64,000 nt of DNA from Octopus sinensis (Eukaryota): assembly GCF_006345805.1 (NCBI RefSeq), contig NC_042998.1, positions 83,204,001 through 83,268,000 on the forward strand. The letters are read 5' to 3'. The notes beneath the pieces are model-generated. The model was not told where the DNA came from. It saw only the letters and a list, made by a program, of their open reading frames with translations, and did not search any database. Every line of letters begins with the position of its first letter. The stretch's first letter is position 1. Shown one piece after another: positions 5,566 through 64,000 of the stretch. The position numbers were made by a program, and so were the translations under genes.

Positions 5566-5880
5566 CATCATCATTTTACATCCGTTCATGATGGCATGGG
5601 TTTGACAGTTTGACTGGGCTGGCATGCTGGAAGGCTGAACCAGACTCCAGTCTGATTTGGCATGTTTTTCTATGGCTGGATGCCCTTTCTAATGCCAACC
5701 ACTCTGAGAGTGTAATGAGTGCTTTTACATGCCACCAGCACGGGTGCCATTTGCATAACATCAGGGTGCGTTTACGTGCCATGGGTATCTGCCACCACTG
5801 CGATTTTGCTTGGCTTGGTGGATCTTCTTCCCAAGCACAACATAATGTCATGAGACCCAGTACTCAAAAGGAACTCAGCC
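5566..5880 (-). mobile_element. RTE 3' fragment including the last ORF codons
   Basis: (CAT)n tail, 3' UTR and tcttcttcccaagcacaacat matching the LINE C-terminal region. Confidence 0.85.
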
Positions 5881-6056
5881 ACTTCGCCTCCATCAGGCCC
5901 AACACTTGAAAGGAACTCAGCCACTTTGCTTCTGTCAGGCCCAACGCTTGAAAGGAACTCAGCCACTTTGCCTCCATCAGGCCCAATGTTCAAAAGGAAC
6001 TCAGCCACTTTGCCTCCATCAGGCCCAAAGCTCGAAAGGAACTCCACCACTTTTCC
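5866..6056. repeat. 42-bp tandem repeat, about 4.5 units, at the 5' junction of a truncated RTE 3' fragment
   Basis: GGAACTC recurs at 5870, 5912, 5954, 5996 and 6038. Confidence 0.92.
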
Positions 6057-6174
6057 CTTTGAACGTTGGGCCTGATGGAGGTACTCATCCACTTTGTATT
6101 TCAAACGTTGTAGAAATGAAAGAAATATTAAATAAAAGCATAATTTAAGTAGAGAACAAAAATCTGATTGATCT

Positions 6175-23938: not shown

Positions 23939-24247
23939 TAAGATGATAGTGTATGGTTTCTAGCTGACTGGGTGATCAAACTTCCCCTAAAACTATATTG
24001 TTCATGAACCTTGATTGAAATCTTCATTTTTACCCTGCATCAATTCAAACTGAACATAAATGGGTGGGATCAGTGCATTTGTCCACCCACTCCGATATTT
24101 AGAGGCTCTGGAAGAAATACATTCCATGTGCTTTGTCCCTCCATTGTCCAAGAAGCTAAATCGGTGGTTCTCAACTATTTTGTACCTATGGGCCTATTTG
24201 ATTCCTATTGAACCTCTATGGCCATTTGATGTATGTATGTATATATA

Positions 24248-24289
<42 letters not shown>

Positions 24290-24293
<4 letters not shown>

Positions 24294-24755
24294 CCTCGAC
24301 TGGCTTCTGTGCCGGTGGCACATAAAAAGCACCATCTGAACGTGGCTGATGCCAGCATCGCCTCGACTGGCTTCTGTGCCGGTGGCACATAAAAAGCACC
24401 ATCTGAACGTGGCTGATGCCAGCACCGCCTCGACTGGCTTCTGTGCCGGTGACACATAAAAAGCACCATCTGAACGTAGCCGATGCCAGCGCCACCTCGG
24501 CTGGCTTCTGTGCCGGTGGCACGTTAAAAGCACCAACCAATCGTGGCCGATGCCAGACTCCCCTGGCACCTGTGCAGGTGGCACGTAAAAAGCGCCCACT
24601 ACACTCGCGGAGTGGTTGGTGTTAGGAAGGGCATCCAGCTGTAGAAACACTGCCAGATCAGACTGGAGCCTGGTGCAGCCCCTGGCTTCCCAGACCCCGG
24701 TCGAACCGTCCAACCCGTGCTAGCGCGGAAAACGGACGCTAAACTATGATGATGG
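24290..24755 (+). mobile_element. Young copy of the RTE 3' end with a 67-bp tandem repeat (about 3.7 units)
   Basis: Unit starts at 24293, 24360, 24427 and 24494. CpG-rich, tail cgctaaactatgatgatg. Confidence 0.92.
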
Positions 24756-26628
24756 TGAAAAAAAGATCCTACCATATTTTTTATAATTAAACATTATTAA
24801 GAATTGTTCATGAAAGATTAAAATATTTTGTGTATTATAGAAATTGCAGCACATAAATTTTAACAAAAAAATCTTGGAATTGCCCAAAGTTATATGGTGC
24901 CTGGTTGAAAACCACTGAGCTAAATGAAAAGCAAAAACAAAAAGATTATGTGCAGGATCAGGTTAGAGAGTTATTGAATGAAGTGATGCTTTATAGATAT
25001 TGTCAGCTCATTATTTTTCAATCAATGCTTTATTCAGTCATTTGTGTATAATTGAAAGCTTATTCTCTTGCATTTTAAACAATATTTTCTGGCTAGTGAT
25101 TAGATTTACTTCACAGAATGTGACTTGTTTTAAATTAGATATGACTCGATAATATCTCCAATTTAATTTACACCTACACATATGAACCAACAGTGCTGAT
25201 TTTCAGGTTTTTCTTGGATTTTTTCTAACATGTGGTGGGTGGATTATTATCATTAGTTTTTTTTCTTTCTTTTGTTAGTTTTCCTTATTCCTTGGGGAAG
25301 TCATCATTATCTTCTTTAATTTCTCCGATAAAATAACAGCTGTTGTAAAGTGAAGTCAGCTTATCACTGCTTGTTTTCTATGTTACCATGCTATTAATTG
25401 TTTTGGTTTCACTGTTTTCTTTTTCCTTCTTTCCTTTTTTTTTCATGGGGGTGTGAGCATCTATTTTTAATTCTTTGAATTTTTGTTTTCTATAAAGAAG
25501 AGGCTAGTTTATAACAAAATAACAAAGCTCCATTGCTGGAATTTCGATAACAATGGTAAAGTTACTTGTTGAATTTTAGCAAAACATTTCATTTCATTTC
25601 ATCTTTTTTACTGCTCTGTTTATTGATGGAATTTGAAAAGTGTATTATTTTTGCCGGTCATGTTATCTGAAAGACCCCAGTTTTTCAATATAACCATTTA
25701 GATAATTAATAACAAAACTGATGAAAAGTGACACAAATGTAGATCTACTGTGTGTGCGAGCATATAAAAAGTTTTTAATTTCTGTATATTTAACAGAAGA
25801 TGAACAGGTCTTGCACAATTATTCACATATATGGATTATTGAATCTTCAAATCTGAAGTTGAATAACTGCTTAATTAGTACCCAGCCATGAGATGACAAC
25901 TGTTTATTTTTCTGGCCAAAGCAACTATAATACCTCACATATAACAATCTTTAGCTCCCAACCTCTCTTTCAATCACCTTCTTGTCCTTTGAGAGTATGC
26001 TCTGACGCTTCATCAGCACCATCTTTATCACTCCTTCCAGCTCCACGCCAGTTGCTCCCACTCATTCTTATATAGTGTGGGGTGGCTATGTATCTCTTCT
26101 GCAGCAACAAATGTGTTCTCATATCTTTCTTTAATACCTGAATCTCTTAACACCTGGCATTTAACTTCCTCCCTGTTGAACTGATTGGTGTGTTTATGAG
26201 ATTTGGTTACTGTTTCTTACAGCTTGAGAGGTTATGCAAAAACCACTTCTATTGGTTAGCTATTCTTTTGTTGATGGAATTGTATGTCTTGTTAGTGTTC
26301 TTGTTGAACTGTAGGTCAACCCTGATTAATACACTTTAAAAAAAATTTTTTTAGCTATAATATATCTAGGACCACTTTAGCTAATATGACCCTTTTTTTT
26401 CTTAAGTTGGTCAGAAGTGATCTGAGGTAGATTTGCCTGGCTTTCTAACAGATATAGTAACTATTATCTAAAGGCTAACAGATTCAGTTTTGCTTTTTTT
26501 TCTGTTTATATAGGAAATATCTTGACTGTTACAAAGAAAATAAACTTTAAATTCGATTCAAAAGTAACCGTTTATACTTCATATTATTCTGTCAAAAGTA
26601 ATGCTTATTTATTCACATTGTTTTGAAT

Positions 26629-29600
26629 TCATCATCATCATCATCATCATTTAGCGTCCGCTTTCTATGCTGGCATGGGTTGGACGGTGCAACTGGGGTC
26701 TGGGAAGCCAGAAGGCTGCACCAGGCCCAGTCTGATCTGGCAATGTTTCTACGGCTGGATGCCCTTCCTAACGCCAACCACTCCATGAGTGTAGTGGGTG
26801 CTTTTTACGTGCCACCGGCACAGGTGCCAGGCGAGGCTGGTAAACGACCGCGGTCGGATGGTGCTTTTTATGTGCCACCGGCACGGAGGCTAGGCGAGGC
26901 TGGCAACGGCCACGATCGGATGGTGCTTTTTACATGCCACCGGCACGGAAGCCAGTCAGGGTGGCACTGGCAACGGCCACATTCGGATGGTTCTCTTATG
27001 TGCCACCAGCACTGGTATCACAGCTACAATTTCCATTCCTGTTGATCGATTTTGATTTTTGATTTTTTGATTTTCACTTGCCTCAACAGGTCTTCACAAG
27101 TAGGGTTTTGTGTCCCAAGAAGGAAAGGTATGCATAAGTGCACTGAGGCCATGGGTGAATGGTCTCACTTGTCCTGCCGGGTCTTCTCATGCACAGCATA
27201 CTTCCAAAGGTCTTGGTCTCTAGTCATTTCCTCGGTGAGACCTAAAGTTCAAAGGTCGTGCTTCACCACCTCGTCCCAGGTTTTCCTGGGTCTGCCTCTT
27301 CCACAGGTTCCCTCAACAGCTAGGGTGTGGCACTTTTTCACACAACTATCTTCATCCATTCTCGCCACATGGCCATACCAGCGCAAACGTCTCTCTTGCA
27401 CACCGCAACTGATGCTTCTTAGGTCCAACTTCTCTCTCAAGGTACTTACACTCTGTCGAGTATGAACACTGACATTACACATCCATCGGAGCATACTGGC
27501 TTCATTTCTTGCGAGCTGAAGCATATCCTCAGCAGTCACGGCACATGTTTCACTGCCATGTAGCATGGCTGTTCGTACACAAGCATCATACAGTCTACCT
27601 TTTACTCTGAGCGAGAGGCCTTTTGTCCCTAGCAGAGGTAAGAGCTCTCTGAACTTTGCCCAAGCTATTCTTACTTTAGCAGTTACACTTTCAACACACC
27701 TGCCCCCGCTACTGACTTGGTCACCTAGGTAACGGAAGCTATCAACTATTTCTAGTTTTTCTCCCTGGAATGTGGCAGAAGTTGCTCTCTGCGCATTTTC
27801 AGTGTTTATTGCTCCTGAGCATCTGCCACATACAAAAACTATCTTCCTAGTTAGCCTTCCCTTGACGTTGCTGCACCTCTTGTGTGTCCATAGCTTACAC
27901 TTGGTGCATCTTATAGAGTTTCTACCTACACCTTTTCTACAGATCGAGCAAGGCCATCTACCTGAAGGCGTTTGTGACTTGTCTACCTTCTTACTTGTTA
28001 GGACTTTGGTTTTAGCTAGGTTGACTCTAAGGCCCTTCGATTCTAATCCTTGCTTCCACACCTGAAACTTCTCCTCCAGTTCTGATAGTGACTCAGCAAT
28101 TAGAGCAAGGTCATCAGCATAGAGGAGCTCCCAGGGGCATCCTGTCTTGAATTCCTCCGTTATTGCCTGGAGGACTACGATAAATAGGAGGGGGCTGAGG
28201 GCTGAACCGTGGTGGACCCCTACCTCTACCCGGAATTCTTCACTGTACTCGTAGCCAACCCTCACCTTACTAGCAGCGTCCCTGTACATGGCTTGCACAG
28301 CTCTCACTAACCATTCATCTATCCCTAGTTTCTTCATTGACCACTAGATAAGGGATCGGGGGACCCTGTCGAAAGCTTTCTCCATGTCAATGAATGCCAG
28401 GTACAGGGGCTTATCTTTGGCTAGATATTTCTCCTGCAGCTGTCTTACCAGGAATATGGCATCAGTGGTGCTTTTCCCTGGCACGAGTCCAAACTGCATC
28501 TCATCTAAATTAACTCTCTCTCTAATTAGTTGGGCTATGACCCTCTCCGTAACCTTCATTACCTGATCCAACAGCTTGATACCTCTGTAATTATTTGTAT
28601 CTAGGGCGTCACCTTTACCTTTGTAGCAGTTGACTATTATGCTGCTACACCAGTCATTGGATATGACTCCTTCGTGTATTACCTGGTTAACTATACGGGT
28701 GACTAGGCTATAGCCGACACTACCAGATATTTTGAGCATCTTTGCAGTAATACCTGATGGGCCTGGGGCTTTCCCTGTCTTCATGCTTCTAATTGCCTCA
28801 ATTACCAAGGAACTCTCAAATCGGATAGCTGGTCCCTCTGTTGGGGTTGACATTCGGCAAACTCTCTTTATCCCATTCATTTTCTTCATTCAGCAACATT
28901 TCATAGTGGCGTCTCCACACCTCTCTCTTTGCATCCTCATTTAGCGCAAGTGAACCATCATCCATGCAGACACATTTCTCTCCTACCACATCACGATTCT
29001 CTCTTACACACTGTCTTGCAACGCAAAATACCTCAAGTCTTTCGTCCTCACGGCGCAGAACATTGGCAAACTTTTTCTTATCTGCTTCCCCTCTGGCTAA
29101 ATAAACCTGTCTCCTAGCTTCTCTTTTCGCAGTCTGATACAATTCCCTGCTACCCCCATTTTTCCAGTCCTTCCAAGCCTGTCTCTTTTCTCTAATAGCC
29201 CTGTCTACAACATTGTTCCACCACCACGTTATTCTAGGTTGAGAGGGGACTTTGCACCAGCCACAGATCTGGTCAGTGGCTCTCAGCAGGTTGTCCCTTA
29301 GAAACGTCCAGTTGTCTTCTACCCCCTGTGATGCTCTATCCCCTTCTACTTCGTCAAAGGCTTCAAGTAATATGTCCCTAAATCTCTGTCCATTTGCAGG
29401 ATCTTTAAGCTTCCAGATCCTTCTTCTCCATGTTGGTCGTCTTCTGGTCGTCCTCTTAGTCCTGATCCTAAAGTTACTAACTACCAGTCTATGTTGTGGG
29501 GTACATTCTTTGCCTGGGAAGGTTTTCGCATTTATAAGCAGCCATCTTTCCCTTTTCCTGGCAAGGATGTAGTCAATTTGGCTGGTATGTCGACCCGATC

Positions 29601-30112
29601 GGTAGGTGACTAGGTGGCTGGTAGGTTTCCTGAAGTTAGTGTTGCAAACCATGAGATCATTTGCGTCGAGAACTCCAGGAGCCTGGTTCCCCCCTCGTTG
29701 CGGGAACCATAGCCATAGCCTCCATGTACACCATGGAAGACCCCAGCATGTTTTCCAACATGCCCATTGAAATCACCAGCCACAAAGAGAAGGTCTCTGT
29801 CGTTCGTCAACGAGTTAGTCTGCAGTAAGGCGTCATAGAATTGGTCTTTCTGTCCATCGGGTAGCCCTGGCTGAGGGGCATAGGCCGATATAATGGTTGC
29901 TAATCCATGATGAAGCACTATTCTAATCTTAAGTATTCTGTCACTTACTCTGATTACCTCAAGTATCTTATCTACCCATTTTTCAGCGAGAAGTATACCC
30001 ACGCCTCCAACCCCGTCAGTGTTTCCTGCCCAGAAAATCTTGTATCTGTGTCCTTTGCCTGTGAGGAACCTAGCAGAACCGCCTCTCCACCTTACTTCTT
30101 GGATGCAATATG
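26629..30112 (-). mobile_element. RTE-clade LINE, 5'-truncated inside the APE endonuclease; APE plus RT, 3' UTR with tandem repeats and (TGA)n tail
   Basis: APE motifs IQEVRW, IISAYAPQ, AGDFNGHVG, SQIDYIL. RT motifs DMEKAFDRV, GSALSPLLF, LYADDL. Native stop at 27165-27167. Lesions are frameshifts near 29630 and 28850 and nonsense codons at 28344-28346 (TAG for TGG) and 27249-27251 (TGA, probably from CGA). Possible degenerate TSD cattgttttgaat (26616-26628) / cattattttgtaaat (30113-30127). Confidence 0.95.
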
Positions 30113-45946: not shown

Positions 45947-46344
45947 TATATATTATATTAGGTATTATATAATGTTATATAATATTATATATTATAATGT
46001 ATATATTATATATATTATGATATTGTATATATATTATATAATATATTATGTTATATATATGTATGTATTAATGAACTGGTTACAAATTTTGCAAAATAAA
46101 AACGTCTTATTCCTATTTTTGAAGATTTTGCTGATACTACTCTCTCGTTAAAAATAATTTGGAGATGAAATGGAGTTGACTATCATCAAAATCTTTTTTT
46201 CATGTTGTGCCTCAAGAACAGTTCACTTAGCAGAGCCTATCCCCAACAATCGATATTTTACAATAATACATCAACTTCCCTCATTTAAATTTCAATGTCA
46301 CATTAATTTATGTCCCGAAAATCAGCTTAATTATTCTTTTATTC

Positions 46345-46900
46345 TTTTACTTGTTTTTGTCATTTTGACTGCATCCATGTTGGAGCACCACCTTGAAGGG
46401 TTTTAGTCAAACAAATCAACCCCAGGACTTTTTTTTTTTTAAAGCCTAATATTTATTTTGTAGGAACTCCCAGGGATATATCAGGTAATTCTTTCATAAA
46501 TGTGTCCTTACCCCACAGCCAGTACGTTGTCATTAATCCACGACCTCTTACTTCTCTTTCCCCTCTACACTCTAATTTATAACCGCCTAAAGAATCAAGA
46601 ATTGCTGCAGTATTCTCGCTCACTTGAATGTGTAAGGTATAAGAACTAGACTAAGTTACAGGGACATAAGCACACAAACACTGGTTATCAAGTGATGATA
46701 GGAGACAAACACACACGCACACATATATATATATATGATGGGCCTCTTTCAGTTTCTATCCGCCAAATCCACATGCAAGGCTTTGGTTAGCCCAAGGATA
46801 TAGTAGAAGACACTTGCCCAAGGTGTCATGCAGTGGGACTGAATCTAGAACCATGAGACTGGGAAGCAAGTTTTTTACCACACAGTCACGCCTGCCCCTA
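46345..46900 (-). mobile_element. SINE family A interrupted by the guanylyl-cyclase fragment
   Basis: Tail half 46345-46455 and body/head half 46651-46900 are collinear with family A. About 25 nt of SINE are replaced. Confidence 0.88.
46453..46650 (-). pseudogene. Captured fragment of a guanylyl cyclase (class III cyclase catalytic-domain C-terminus), 65 codons plus TAA, embedded in a SINE
   Basis: Minus-strand reading SSSYTLHIQVSENTAAILDSLGGYKLECRGEREVRGRGLMTTYWLWGKDTFMKELPDISLGVPTK* has no stop or frameshift. It matches the receptor-GC pattern (MES...IH/QVSE.T...L...GGY.LE.RGE.EVKGKG.MTTYWL.GK). No start codon and no other GC exon recognised in the window. Confidence 0.88.
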
Positions 46901-47784
46901 TGCTTCATTATTTTTTAATATTAATTGAAATACAGTGGGTTTATTCCAATTGAAACATAGTAACGAAAACTGGGTTAAACTTCCCTGTCTGACTTGGTTC
47001 ACCAAAAATCTGTCACTGTTCTAAGATTTTAAATGATAAAGGTTTTTGATATATTAGAAAATGAAGGGGAGGACTCCACAATTCAAGAAAGTTCTTGGGA
47101 AACCAAGCATACTTTATTTAGATTATCTATGTCACTTAGGAAAGCAAGGATGTCTCGGTTTACCATATCTTTATCCCTAAAATTTCATACCTATGTGATA
47201 AACTTCTACTGGAAAATTGACTCATTCAGTTTCATGAGTCAATGAAATAGTGAAATGATTGACTTCAAGTGATATTGAACTACCAGCCCCTAGTTTTGAG
47301 TTCAAATCTACTGTGGGTATATAGTTATGGTTATGAGCAGAACACTTTAAGTATTCCTCACTTGGTGTATCTTGCCTGACTTTTATGAATATTTATCAGG
47401 TCATATAGAATTATTATTTAAAAGAAACTGCCATCTGTTGTTGAAGCTGATGCTTAACTTTGTATAGTTGAATTGGGAAAAATAAAAGCTCTGATTTCCA
47501 CTCTATGCCCTCATATCTCAAAGTTTCAAATTAATATTATTATTATTATTATTATTATTTTAGTGGTAGCCTCTGATTTCTTAGCTTTGTGGAGACCAAA
47601 CATGTAATTGCCAGTGATTTTGTATCTAAGTTTAATTATTTCTGGTGAATAATGCAGTTTTAAAAAATAAGTATTTTGCTTAATGCTAGTTATGTTCATT
47701 ATACTCATTGTAAGTATCGTTCGCTTTTGTTTTTTTTTACATATTCTTTTTAATTATCATTATCATGAAATAGGTTTTATGGAA

Positions 47785-60672: not shown

Positions 60673-62619
60673 GTATGTACCACCTGTTCTTTACTTGTTA
60701 CTTTTCATATAGAGCAGAATTTTGAGATTTTTCTTCTCATCATTATATCATTATCTCCCCCTCTTTTCTATTTATTTAGAATTATTGAGAATTATTATTA
60801 ACCACATATAGTGAGGTGTGCAGTTGGGAGCAGGGTCTTTTGTTTCCATAGTAATTTCTGATCATTAGTAAATTTTTCCAAGTTAATATTAAACACATGT
60901 ATATATGTTTTTAGTTTAGATCACTTACACACATGCATGTTTCTTAATTCTATAGAAGCCAACACATTGCATTGTTTTCTCTATTTTGTATGAAATCTGA
61001 AAATTATTCACATAAGCTCAATTTGAATAACTCAAAATAATGAATGTTTTGAAACATATGCTATTTATAGTGTTCAATAATCGTTATAGCTCTGAGCAGT
61101 AGTTGAGGTTTTCTCATAATTTACCCTCACCACCACACACCAACAAAAAACGATTTCCTTTTTCTTCCTGTGAATCATTAAAAAATCTATATTTTTAATG
61201 AGAAATTTCAATAAAAATATTTTAAAATATTCTACCAGGGGAAGTTTACTACTTTGAAGAATATATAAAACATTTTGACTGTTTTTAATATAATTTCTAA
61301 ATTGCTTATGATTCTAAAGATCACATACTTTATGTTTAAATATTAAGAAGGAAATTATTATTTTGAAATGGATATTATTTACATATCAAAATAAATTTGA
61401 AGAAAAATCAAAGGATTATGTTAGGATTATTTTTGTGACATTGGCAAACGATTACAGCATTATTTCTAAATATTATGATGTATGAAAATGTGTTATTAAA
61501 ATATGTTGGTACTTAAATACATATCAATTTGTTAAATAAAGTCCGGTTGTGTGAATTTAATATCTAATTAGAAAGCATTTTCAAAGTCCTTTTGTGATTT
61601 GAAATTATATTAAATAGTTTATAATTGGCATTTTAAATGGATAATATCTTGCCTGTATAATCTAGTTTCCAGTTATTTCAAATATCCAATTAAAAGATTC
61701 ATTGCTTTATTTTTCTTTGAGAAACAAAGTCTGAAAAAGTTGTTTCTTTAACATTGTTTTTTAAAAACTTTGTTTATCTCAAAAATTACATGATAATTTA
61801 GAGAAGTTAATTTAATTTACTCAATTTACATGCATTTACTTTAGAGAGTTACCTCATTCAGTATTTTTTCCAAACTCTACAAGTTTGTAATCTCATAAAG
61901 AGGGTTTTAGTAATTATTATTTTAGTAATACACACACCTCTTATAGTGCTTTATGTTGCATGACCAGCCTGGCCGAATAGATGTTATTTTGCTTCAGAAA
62001 TACAGTTTCACAAGATCAGTTGAGGCTGTTGTGACAAATATTCTTTTACTACTCAATTATTTTTTTTTTTTTTAAGATCTTATGTCTTGTCTCTGAATTA
62101 ACACTTACAGATCATATCAGTTTCTGCTGAATTCATTTTTCTCTGTGTATACATTTATTCATTTTTCCCTCAGATTCACACAATTTACATTTCGCTGTAA
62201 CTGTGGATTGCAATTTTTGTCACATTATAGTAGCTGCCAATATTAATTTTAAGACACACTTACCTAGCAGCTCTTCACTCCATACTTGTCAAGCTCAGTG
62301 TTAACTAAAATTTATATGCATAGGTTTCTTCACAAGTCTCTTCTAAGCTTCAAACAAATTGTACAAGACATATATATTGAATAAGTAACAATAGGCAGTA
62401 CTTTCTTTTCAAGTGCAGTAGCATTTAACTTACAATTTTATTTCATGATTTAACTCTTTTATATGTATATATGTATATGTATATACGTATATATGTAAGT
62501 GCATATGTATATGTATATATGTAAGTATATATGTATATGTATATATGTATGTATATGTATGAATGTATATGTATATATGTATGTGCATATGTGTATATGC
62601 ATATGTGTATATGCATATG

Positions 62620-62884
62620 TGTATATACACAAGCGATGTTGGAGGGACAAACACAGACACACAAACATATACACACACATACATATATATATATATATAC
62701 ACACACATACACTCATATATACGACGGGCTTCTTTCAGTTTCCGTCTACCAAATCTACTCACAAAGCTTTGGTCGGCCCGAGGCTATAGTAGAAGGCACT
62801 TGCCCAAGGTGCCACGCAGTGGGACTGATCCCGGACCCATGTAGCTCGTAAGCAAGCAACTTACCATACAGCCACTCCTACGCC
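62620..62884 (-). mobile_element. SINE family A head and body inside TA arrays, young
   Basis: CpG-rich head ...gccactcctacgcc. The tail is missing. Confidence 0.88.
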
Positions 62885-63271
62885 TATGTATGTATATGTG
62901 TATGTATATATATGTATATGTGTATATGTATATATGTATATGTGTATATGTATATGTGTATATGTATATGTATACATGTATATGTATACATGTATATGTA
63001 TACATGTATATGTATGTATATGTATGTATATATATATGTATATGTATGTATATGTATGTATATATATATGTATATGTATGTATATGTATGTATATATATA
63101 TGTATATGTATGTATATGTATGTATATATTATGTATATGTATGTTATGTATGTATATGTATGTATATGTATGTATATATGTATGTATATATATATGTATA
63201 CGTATATATATGTATATATATATAATGTATATATTATATGTATATATATATATGTATATATATATTATATG

Positions 63272-63334
<63 letters not shown>

Positions 63335-63492
63335 GTATATATATATATGTATATGTATATATATGTATATATATATATGTATATATGTATATGTATATAT
63401 ATGTATATATATATATTATGTATATATATATATATGTATATATTATATATGTATATTATAATATATATATGTATAATATATATATGTATATA

Positions 63493-63525
<33 letters not shown>

Positions 63526-63814
63526 GTATATGTATATGTGTATATGTGTATATATAATATGTATAGTATATGTATATATATGTATATGTATATGTATAGT
63601 ATATATATTGTATATATATATATGTATATAATATATGTATATATATATATATATGTGTATATATATATGTATATATATATATATATATGTATATGTATAT
63701 TGTATATGTATATATATATGTATATTATATATATAGTATATGATATATATATATGTATATATATATATTATATGATATATATATATATGTATATATATAT
63801 ATGTATAATATATG

Positions 63815-63847
<33 letters not shown>

Positions 63848-63860
63848 GTATATATATATG

Positions 63861-63891
<31 letters not shown>

Positions 63892-64000
63892 GATATGTAT
63901 ATATATATATGTATATATATATATGTAATATATATATGTATATATATATATATATGTATATGTGTATATATATTATGTATATATGTGTATATATATGTAT
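62885..64000. repeat. More than 1.1-kb degenerate (TA)n/(TATG)n array running off the window end
   Basis: Almost only T and A with interspersed G. Source of the MYIY-type ORFs. Confidence 0.97.

What the first reader, a model, noticed from the sequence alone, without database searches (positions are those of the whole stretch)
46453..46650. Intact guanylyl-cyclase C-terminal coding fragment captured inside a SINE
Seen: 65 uninterrupted codons of a cyclase catalytic-domain tail on the minus strand sit in the middle of a family A SINE, replacing about 25 nt, with collinear SINE halves on both sides. Both junctions show micro-similarity. The SINE tacttatt region overlaps the TAA stop (tatttatttt), and the SINE gaaccgctaagtta is read as gaactagactaagtta. 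As I recall, receptor-GC genes have introns just before the IH/QVS motif and between EVK and GKG, and both positions are continuous here, which suggests an mRNA template. Inference: a double template switch during SINE reverse transcription, or cDNA-patched repair, produced a SINE-mRNA-SINE chimera. The lack of decay implies it is recent.
Basis: partly seen in the sequence, partly recalled or inferred. Interest (0 to 1): 0.8.

Follow-up and report, generated by a model that had tools for sequence, protein, structure and literature searches.

The report
Cyclase gene scrap patched into SINE
A 190-base piece from the end of an octopus guanylyl-cyclase gene sits inside an old SINE repeat, most likely as a dead repair patch; because the parent gene has no introns, the sequence cannot show that it was copied from mRNA.

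Summary
On the minus strand, 46650-46453 is an open frame of 65 codons plus a stop. Its first 63 codons (46650-46462) match codons 455-517 of the 524-codon Octopus bimaculoides gene for XP_052827984 ('guanylate cyclase 2G-like'): 94% at nucleotide level, 90% at protein level, no gaps. The piece replaces 17-20 nt in the middle of an otherwise collinear tRNA-type octopus SINE. Each junction shares 2 nt (AG, CC). The stop just upstream (TAG), the last two codons and the TAA all come from the SINE.

But the octopod parent family has no introns (Octopus, Argonauta, a third contig), so continuity there says nothing about an mRNA template. No other cyclase-coding sequence occurs in the 64 kb, so this is not a nested gene's last exon.

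A short target deletion, microhomology, no poly(A) and no duplication at the insert match a templated patch at a repaired break. That fits better than two template switches returning to the same place. The open frame is not evidence of youth or selection: 59% of simulated neutral copies stay open. This is an ordinary kind of event and of low interest.

The parts
46651..46901 (-). SINE 5' part: tRNA-related head, internal (TA/TG)n microsatellite and the first half of the 3' domain, ending ...CCCTGTAACTTAG.
   Evidence: Matches the window SINE consensus: head positions 1-186 at 82.8% and tail positions 4-55 at 82.7%. Alignments.
46462..46652 (-). Cyclase-derived insert of 189-191 nt. It corresponds to codons 455-517 of the 524-codon O. 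bimaculoides gene for XP_052827984, which is the last part of the catalytic domain plus part of the C-terminal tail. The first two bases (AG) are shared with the SINE.
   Evidence: 180/191 nt identical to L001 11361-11551 with no gaps. 57/63 residues identical. Pfam PF00211.
46331..46461 (-). SINE 3' part, resuming at consensus ...ATAGAATAAGTACTAGGCTT and running to the GTAAAAGA-type tail. It supplies codons ACA AAA and the TAA stop (46455-46453), an AATAAA hexamer and an A12 run.
   Evidence: Tail consensus positions 80-188 at 80.2%. Alignment.
46453..46650 (-). Open frame of 65 codons plus a stop: 63 cyclase codons and 2 SINE codons. An in-frame SINE TAG (46653-46651) lies directly upstream. 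The only ATG in frame is codon 40.
46902..46912 (-). Probable upstream target-site duplication of the whole SINE (AATAATGAAGC).
   Evidence: Identical at 10 of 11 bases to 46335-46325, read from the sequence. My rough estimate of the chance of such a match near both ends is about 0.01.
46325..46335 (-). Probable downstream target-site duplication (AATAATTAAGC), directly after the SINE tail repeats.

Best explanation
An ordinary, old tRNA-derived octopus SINE, bounded by its own probable target-site duplication, later broke between ...AACTTAG and CCAATAG.... The break was rejoined by end joining. About 17-20 nt of SINE were lost. A roughly 190-nt patch was filled in, copied from an internal stretch of an intronless receptor guanylyl-cyclase gene or from its transcript. 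Each junction shares 2 nt. The result is a non-functional gene-fragment pseudogene. Its frame is still open only because it is short and moderately young, and both of its stop codons are accidental SINE sequence.

Shown here: the anatomy, the identity of the parent family, the lack of introns in that family, and the absence of any other cyclase sequence nearby.

Inferred: the break-repair mechanism, the order of events (SINE first, patch later), and the lack of function. Whether the patch was copied from RNA or DNA is left open.
For: - The insert is an internal piece of coding sequence. It has no mRNA 3' end and no poly(A), and it ends 21 coding nt before the parent's stop codon.
- SINE sequence is deleted at the site, not duplicated: 17-20 nt are missing.
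- Each junction has 2 nt of microhomology, AG and CC.
- The SINE halves stay in register, as expected for the two ends of one break.
- At 189-191 nt the insert matches the size of experimental templated insertions at induced breaks (73-414 bp, median 191 bp). Their class-2 hallmarks are microdeletion, microhomology, no target duplication and no poly(A) (PMC5110952).
- The SINE copy is older-looking. It differs from the consensus at 15.5% of non-CpG sites, at least 6.9% of them private, and 8 of 13 CpGs have decayed. The insert differs from the nearest gene at 5.8%, and at least 2 of those 11 changes lie on the gene's side.
- No function is indicated. No other cyclase-coding sequence occurs in the 64 kb, an in-frame TAG lies directly upstream, and pN/pS of 0.35 over 11 differences fits a mix of a constrained parent and a neutral copy.
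Against: - No empty-site allele or orthologous SINE without the insert could be examined, so the order of events is inferred.
- The age contrast is soft. If the 26 shared SINE differences mark a subfamily, the SINE's private divergence (6.9%) is not significantly above the insert's (about 2-6%).
- Insert and SINE point the same way. Template switching requires that, while break repair gives it only half the time.
- The imperfect similarity AG..GTTC between the SINE (TTAGCGGTTC) and the parent (CAGTCTAGTTC) could have guided a switch back to this spot.
- The window's species and the true same-genome parent are unknown.
- No reads were available to rule out misassembly.
Confidence: 0.6

Rival explanations
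1. While a LINE enzyme was reverse-transcribing a SINE RNA, it jumped to a cyclase mRNA, copied about 190 nt, and jumped back to a SINE RNA. The tripartite chimera then integrated as one unit.
For: - All three parts have the same orientation.
- The whole element seems flanked by one 11-nt target duplication, 10 of 11 bases identical.
- Each junction has short homology, and AG..GTTC is similar at the return point.
- Double template jumps that give tripartite retro-chimeras are documented (PMC2104539).
Against: - The return jump must land within 17-20 nt of the departure point on the same kind of template. Documented chimeras join different RNAs end to end and do not resume the first one in register.
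- The insert looks younger than the SINE: 5.8% or less against 7-15%.
- None of the other SINE copies in the window carries the insert.
- The intron argument offered for an RNA template is void.
Confidence: 0.15
2. Replication-based template switching at DNA level (FoSTeS or MMBIR type). A stalled or broken fork inside the SINE primed on the cyclase gene through microhomology, copied about 190 nt of genomic DNA, and switched back.
For: The signature is the same: short microhomologies, a small deletion at the site and a templated insert from elsewhere. An intronless parent makes a DNA template as good as an RNA one.
Against: No sequence feature here separates this from an end-joined patch. Such events more often copy nearby sequence, and no cyclase gene lies within the 64 kb.
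Confidence: 0.1
3. The piece is a working terminal exon. A transcript splices into the SINE-derived TTAG at 46651 and ends at the SINE-derived TAA/AATAAA.
For: The frame is open. An AG preceded by a pyrimidine-rich stretch sits exactly at its start, and an AATAAA overlaps the stop.
Against: - No upstream cyclase-coding sequence occurs anywhere in the window.
- The parent family has no introns, so there is no spliced cyclase gene to belong to.
- The tail alone lacks most of the catalytic domain.
- The open frame is expected by chance (0.59).
Confidence: 0.04
4. Assembly artefact: a chimeric join of SINE-containing reads with cyclase gene reads.
For: SINE-rich octopus assemblies are error-prone. 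The O. bimaculoides cyclase locus itself is full of gaps.
Against: A false join would not give two junctions that resume the same SINE in register. The insert also carries its own substitutions, at least 4 of them derived.
Confidence: 0.04

Closest known systems
Class 2 templated sequence insertions (break-repair patches) described in human cells and human polymorphism (Onozawa et al. 2014; review PMC5110952)
   Same: A piece of about 190 nt copied from a distant transcribed locus. No target duplication or poly(A) at the insert. A microdeletion at the site and 2-nt microhomologies. The size equals the reported median of 191 bp.
   Different: This one is fixed or present in a cephalopod germline and lies inside a SINE. 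An RNA origin, shown experimentally in the human system, cannot be tested here because the donor gene has no introns.
LINE-mediated template-switch chimeras: U6-L1 and similar bipartite elements, and tripartite chimeras (Buzdin and co-workers; PMC2104539)
   Same: Sense-oriented fusion of different transcripts. The whole element is probably bounded by one target duplication. The 3' part is a retroelement tail.
   Different: Known chimeras join different RNAs in series. Here the first template resumes almost in register after the foreign piece. The foreign piece is an internal mRNA fragment and appears younger than the SINE.
Octopod intronless receptor guanylyl cyclases (O. bimaculoides XP_052827984 / A0A0L8GP06; Argonauta hians GAB1605939 and GAB1605938)
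   Same: The insert is 94% identical in nucleotides to codons 455-517 of XP_052827984, and 68% identical in protein to the Argonauta tail.
   Different: Only 63 of about 1600 codons are present. There are stop codons on both sides and no promoter, start codon or remainder of the catalytic domain.
Processed pseudogenes (retrocopies made by target-primed reverse transcription)
   Same: A gene-derived, intron-free copy at a new locus.
   Different: The copy lacks the mRNA 3' end, a poly(A) tail and its own target duplication. The target site shows a deletion.

Membership tests
Class 2 templated sequence insertion (break-repair patch) | The insert is templated from a locus elsewhere in the genome. 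| tested here: met
   94% identity to the O. bimaculoides cyclase gene. No cyclase gene occurs in the 64 kb window. The same-genome donor was not located.
Class 2 templated sequence insertion (break-repair patch) | No target-site duplication at the insert; a microdeletion instead. | tested here: met
   17-20 nt of SINE consensus (CGGTTCGGCAAAAGAGACCA) are missing and nothing is duplicated.
Class 2 templated sequence insertion (break-repair patch) | No poly(A) tail or polyadenylation-defined 3' end on the insert. | tested here: met
   The insert ends inside the coding sequence, 21 coding nt before the parent's stop codon. The A12 run 20 nt downstream aligns to SINE ACAAAGAATAA.
Class 2 templated sequence insertion (break-repair patch) | Microhomology or untemplated bases at the junctions. 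| tested here: met
   AG is shared on the left and CC on the right. Two nt each is weak on its own.
Class 2 templated sequence insertion (break-repair patch) | An empty, pre-insertion allele exists or existed. | not testable with these tools
   No orthologous locus or population data could be reached. Two DNA scans of the metagenome collection found nothing.
Class 2 templated sequence insertion (break-repair patch) | The patch was copied from RNA. | not testable with these tools
   The donor family has no introns, so splicing leaves no mark.
LINE template-switch chimera | All parts are in the same transcriptional orientation. | tested here: met
   SINE and cyclase frame are both on the minus strand.
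LINE template-switch chimera | The whole chimera is flanked by one target-site duplication. | tested here: inconclusive
   AATAAT(G/T)AAGC at 46912-46902 and 46335-46325, 10 of 11 bases identical. A plain SINE that was patched later would show the same thing.
LINE template-switch chimera | All parts are the same age, because they were made in one event. | tested here: inconclusive
   SINE: 15.5% non-CpG divergence, 6.9% private. Insert: 5.8% or less. This leans against equal age but is not significant on the private changes alone.
Processed pseudogene | An mRNA 3' end with poly(A) and its own target duplication. | tested here: not met
Functional receptor guanylyl cyclase gene or exon | A complete catalytic domain joined to upstream coding sequence. 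| tested here: not met
   Only Pfam profile positions 140-182 of 183 are present. An in-frame TAG lies directly upstream. tblastn with 150 cyclases found no other cyclase match anywhere in the window, only weak chance alignments.
tRNA-derived SINE (host element) | A multi-copy interspersed element with a tRNA-like head and a characteristic tail. | tested here: met
   More than 10 copies in the window at 74-96% identity to the consensus. The family is also present in O. bimaculoides, and a partial match occurs in Argonauta. ARAGORN does not call a tRNA, so the tRNA-like head is my reading of the box A/B-like motifs.

The most novel reading that the evidence does not exclude
The chimera may have been made at RNA level, by two template switches during SINE reverse transcription, with the return guided by the AG..GTTC similarity. 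It would then be a SINE that carries a piece of coding sequence and could in principle still be mobilised. Alternatively, it may be an mRNA-templated break patch in a cephalopod germline. That could be shown through A-to-I editing footprints, since introns cannot decide the matter.
Probability: 0.15. Interest if true: 0.45.

Novelty: new member of a known kind. Interest (0 to 1): 0.2.

Why it matters
The finding matters little by itself. It is one more gene-fragment pseudogene with the junction signature of a templated repair insertion.

It is useful as a caution. The test 'no introns, therefore from mRNA' fails when the parent gene is itself intronless. An open 63-codon frame is also not evidence of recency or selection.

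The more interesting by-product is the parent family. Octopods encode a 1600-1700-residue receptor guanylyl cyclase family without a single intron, whereas the limpet homologue has many. This points to an old retrogene that kept its function and then duplicated.

Tried and rejected
- Word-indexed protein search with the 65-residue fragment found no candidates. The exhaustive representative search was needed to find the family.
It was replaced by tblastn of 150 cyclases against the window.
- Exact-product look-ups of the 56-residue GTG-start ORF and of a LINE ORF, meant to locate the window's own genome, found nothing.
- The last homology search, with the LINE ORF, did not resolve the species. 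The best named hit is O. vulgaris at 84%.
- Two exact-match DNA scans of the metagenome collection, with the left-junction 21-mer and a conserved 30-mer of the insert, found nothing.
- ARAGORN and the bacterial promoter/terminator scan were uninformative.
- I considered that the last codons and stop were parental (ACAAA..TAAA resembles the parent's ACAAATTCAAATAAA). I rejected this because it needs two deletions, while the SINE alignment needs none.
- I considered two independent SINEs flanking an old cyclase pseudogene. I rejected this because the two SINE parts resume within 20 nt of each other in consensus coordinates.
- I considered that the insert's 5' end marks an exon boundary. I rejected this because it lies 4-5 codons upstream of the ancestral intron site.

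Full report
**What is there**

The window is AT-rich (about 34% GC) and full of one interspersed repeat. Read on the minus strand, 46650-46453 is an open frame of 65 codons plus TAA: SSSYTLHIQVSENTAAILDSLGGYKLECRGEREVRGRGLMTTYWLWGKDTFMKELPDISLGVPTK*. It matches the end of the nucleotide-cyclase catalytic domain. Pfam PF00211 scores E=1.9e-6 over profile positions 140-182 of 183. The best solved structure is the natriuretic peptide receptor NPR1, residues 989-1033, at E=1.9e-8.

**The repeat context**

BLAST of the region against the window, and alignments with 7-10 other copies, show that the frame sits inside one copy of a SINE of about 400 nt. That SINE has a tRNA-like head, an internal TA/TG microsatellite, a 3' domain and a GTAAAAGA-type tail.

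- The left part ends ...CCCTGTAACTTAG at 46651.
- The right part resumes at ACAAAATAAATATTAGGCTT (46461 downward), which aligns to consensus ATAGAATAAGTACTAGGCTT.
- Twenty consensus bases, CGGTTCGGCAAAAGAGACCA, are missing.

An 11-nt direct repeat, AATAAT(G/T)AAGC, lies just outside both ends of the whole element (46912-46902 and 46335-46325). It is a probable target-site duplication of the SINE.

**Where the piece comes from**

The word-indexed search found nothing. The exhaustive search of 1.8 billion representatives found a small family whose C-termini align with the whole fragment. Its members are:

| Protein | Source | Identity to the fragment |
|---|---|---|
| P0001 | O. bimaculoides A0A0L8GP06 | 84% |
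| P0002, P0007 | Argonauta hians GAB1605939 and GAB1605938 | 67%, 64% |
| P0003 | an ENA contig | 58% |

A second O. bimaculoides protein, XP_052827984 (P0151), is closer still. Its locus L001 matches window 46652-46462 at 180/191 nt with no gaps.

The piece corresponds to codons 455-517 of that 524-codon gene. It stops 7 codons (LSEHKFK) before the gene's own stop. Three-way comparison of SINE, parent and window at the junctions gives the following.

- Left: SINE ..AACTTAG against parent ..ATGCAG|TCTAGTTC. They share AG.
- Right: parent GTCCCT|CTC against SINE GAGACCA|ATAG. They share CC.
- The in-frame TAG just upstream, the codons ACA AAA and the TAA are all SINE sequence.

**The intron argument**

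In Lottia gigantea P0153, which has the same ...SLSQHEFK C-terminus, a phase-1 intron splits the Ala codon of SSSV-A-LKIH. A phase-0 intron separates EVK from GKG. Both have GT..AG ends. These sites correspond to fragment codon 5 and to the boundary between codons 35 and 36.

The octopod genes, however, have no introns at all.

- P0151 is one ORF of 1575 nt. The reading frame continues upstream across sized assembly gaps, collinear with the Argonauta protein.
- Argonauta P0002 is 1619 codons in exactly 4860 nt.
- P0003 is 1694 codons in exactly 5085 nt.

Continuity at the two sites therefore says nothing about whether the template was RNA or DNA.

**Not a nested gene**

tblastn of 150 cyclases, including the three 1600-residue octopod proteins, against the whole window found only this piece. 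Everything else scored at chance level. Because the family is intronless, a real gene would have ...FCLFGDTVNTASRMQ directly upstream. What lies there instead is SINE sequence and a stop codon.

**Age and decay**

The insert differs from the P0151 gene at 11 of 189 sites. Five are synonymous and six are not, giving pN/pS of 0.35. I polarised these with Argonauta and the neighbouring O. bimaculoides paralogue.

- Four changes are derived in the window.
- Two are derived in P0151: E31K and T50S, both shared with P0001.
- Five are ambiguous.

So the donor was not the present P0151 sequence. It was an earlier state of that gene, another paralogue, or the orthologue in another Octopus species.

Simulating 11 neutral substitutions on the parent piece leaves the frame open in 59% of trials, and in 40% of trials with 20 substitutions. 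The intact frame is therefore unremarkable.

The host SINE differs from the window consensus at 15.5% of non-CpG sites. Of these 47 differences, 21 are private (6.9% of sites). Eight of its 13 CpGs have decayed. The insert thus looks younger than the SINE. If the shared differences mark a subfamily, the contrast is not significant.

**Mechanism**

Several features match class-2 templated sequence insertions at repaired double-strand breaks: an internal gene piece, no poly(A), no duplication at the insert, a 17-20 nt loss of target, 2-nt microhomologies, and two target ends that stay in register. Those insertions measure 73-414 bp with a median of 191 bp in the experimental system (PMC5110952).

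The shared orientation and the outer target duplication fit it. But it requires the second jump to land within 20 nt of the first on the same type of RNA. It also predicts that SINE and insert are the same age.

My confidence in each reading is:

| Reading | Confidence |
|---|---|
| Break-repair patch | 0.6 |
| Double template switch | 0.15 |
| Replication-based DNA template switching | 0.1 |
| Working terminal exon | 0.04 |
| Misassembly | 0.04 |

**Limits**

The window's species could not be fixed. The closest gene is from O. bimaculoides, and a LINE ORF is 84% identical to an O. vulgaris protein. The true same-genome parent, an empty-site allele, other copies of the chimera, reads and transcripts were all out of reach.

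**Verdict**

The chimera is real and was accurately spotted, but it is of a known and ordinary kind. The mRNA inference is not supported. The parent family's complete lack of introns is the more notable fact.

Noticed in passing
L002 3001-7860; L005 2001-7085; L001 7147-11575; compare L003 1001-10981: The octopod receptor guanylyl-cyclase family (ANF-receptor, EGF-like, kinase-homology and cyclase domains; 1619-1694 residues) is encoded without any intron in Argonauta, Octopus and a third contig. The Lottia homologue has at least 9 introns in its last 503 codons. This looks like an old functional retrogene that then duplicated in tandem. Two copies sit side by side in L001, and the accessions GAB1605938 and GAB1605939 on one Argonauta contig suggest neighbouring genes there too.
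   Followed up: partly
L001 7733-9131, 9875-9974, 11578-11677: The O. bimaculoides cyclase cluster is broken by runs of N. The annotated 524-residue XP_052827984 is therefore a truncated model of a gene of about 1600 residues, and the 3' UTR of the closest parent is unread.
   Followed up: partly
window 27249-30002 (-): A LINE remnant with reverse transcriptase and a PHD-like finger. Its ORF is broken into four pieces. The best named relative is an O. vulgaris protein at 84%.
   Followed up: partly
window 24060-24713 and 26623-27045: ORF-like tandem repeats with recurring ...SDGAFYVPPAQ... units on both strands, next to the LINE. No Pfam match.
   Followed up: no
window 5772-6104 (-): An open frame made of tandem GPDGGKVAEFLSS-like units, with only a sub-threshold DUF7726 match.
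   Followed up: no
window 62000-64000: A very AT-rich (21-26% GC) stretch of long TA/CA-type microsatellite, which generates spurious long ORFs.
   Followed up: no
window 46431-46457 (-): In the host SINE the consensus ACAAAGAATAA has become a pure A12 run. A G-to-A change also creates an AATAAA hexamer overlapping the TAA stop of the captured frame.
   Followed up: no
window 46570, 46561, 46560: Three of the 11 differences from the O. bimaculoides gene are sense-strand A-to-G, and two of them are adjacent. RNA editing in a cDNA template would leave this pattern. One of the three is also G in Argonauta, so nothing can be concluded without the true parent.
   Followed up: partly
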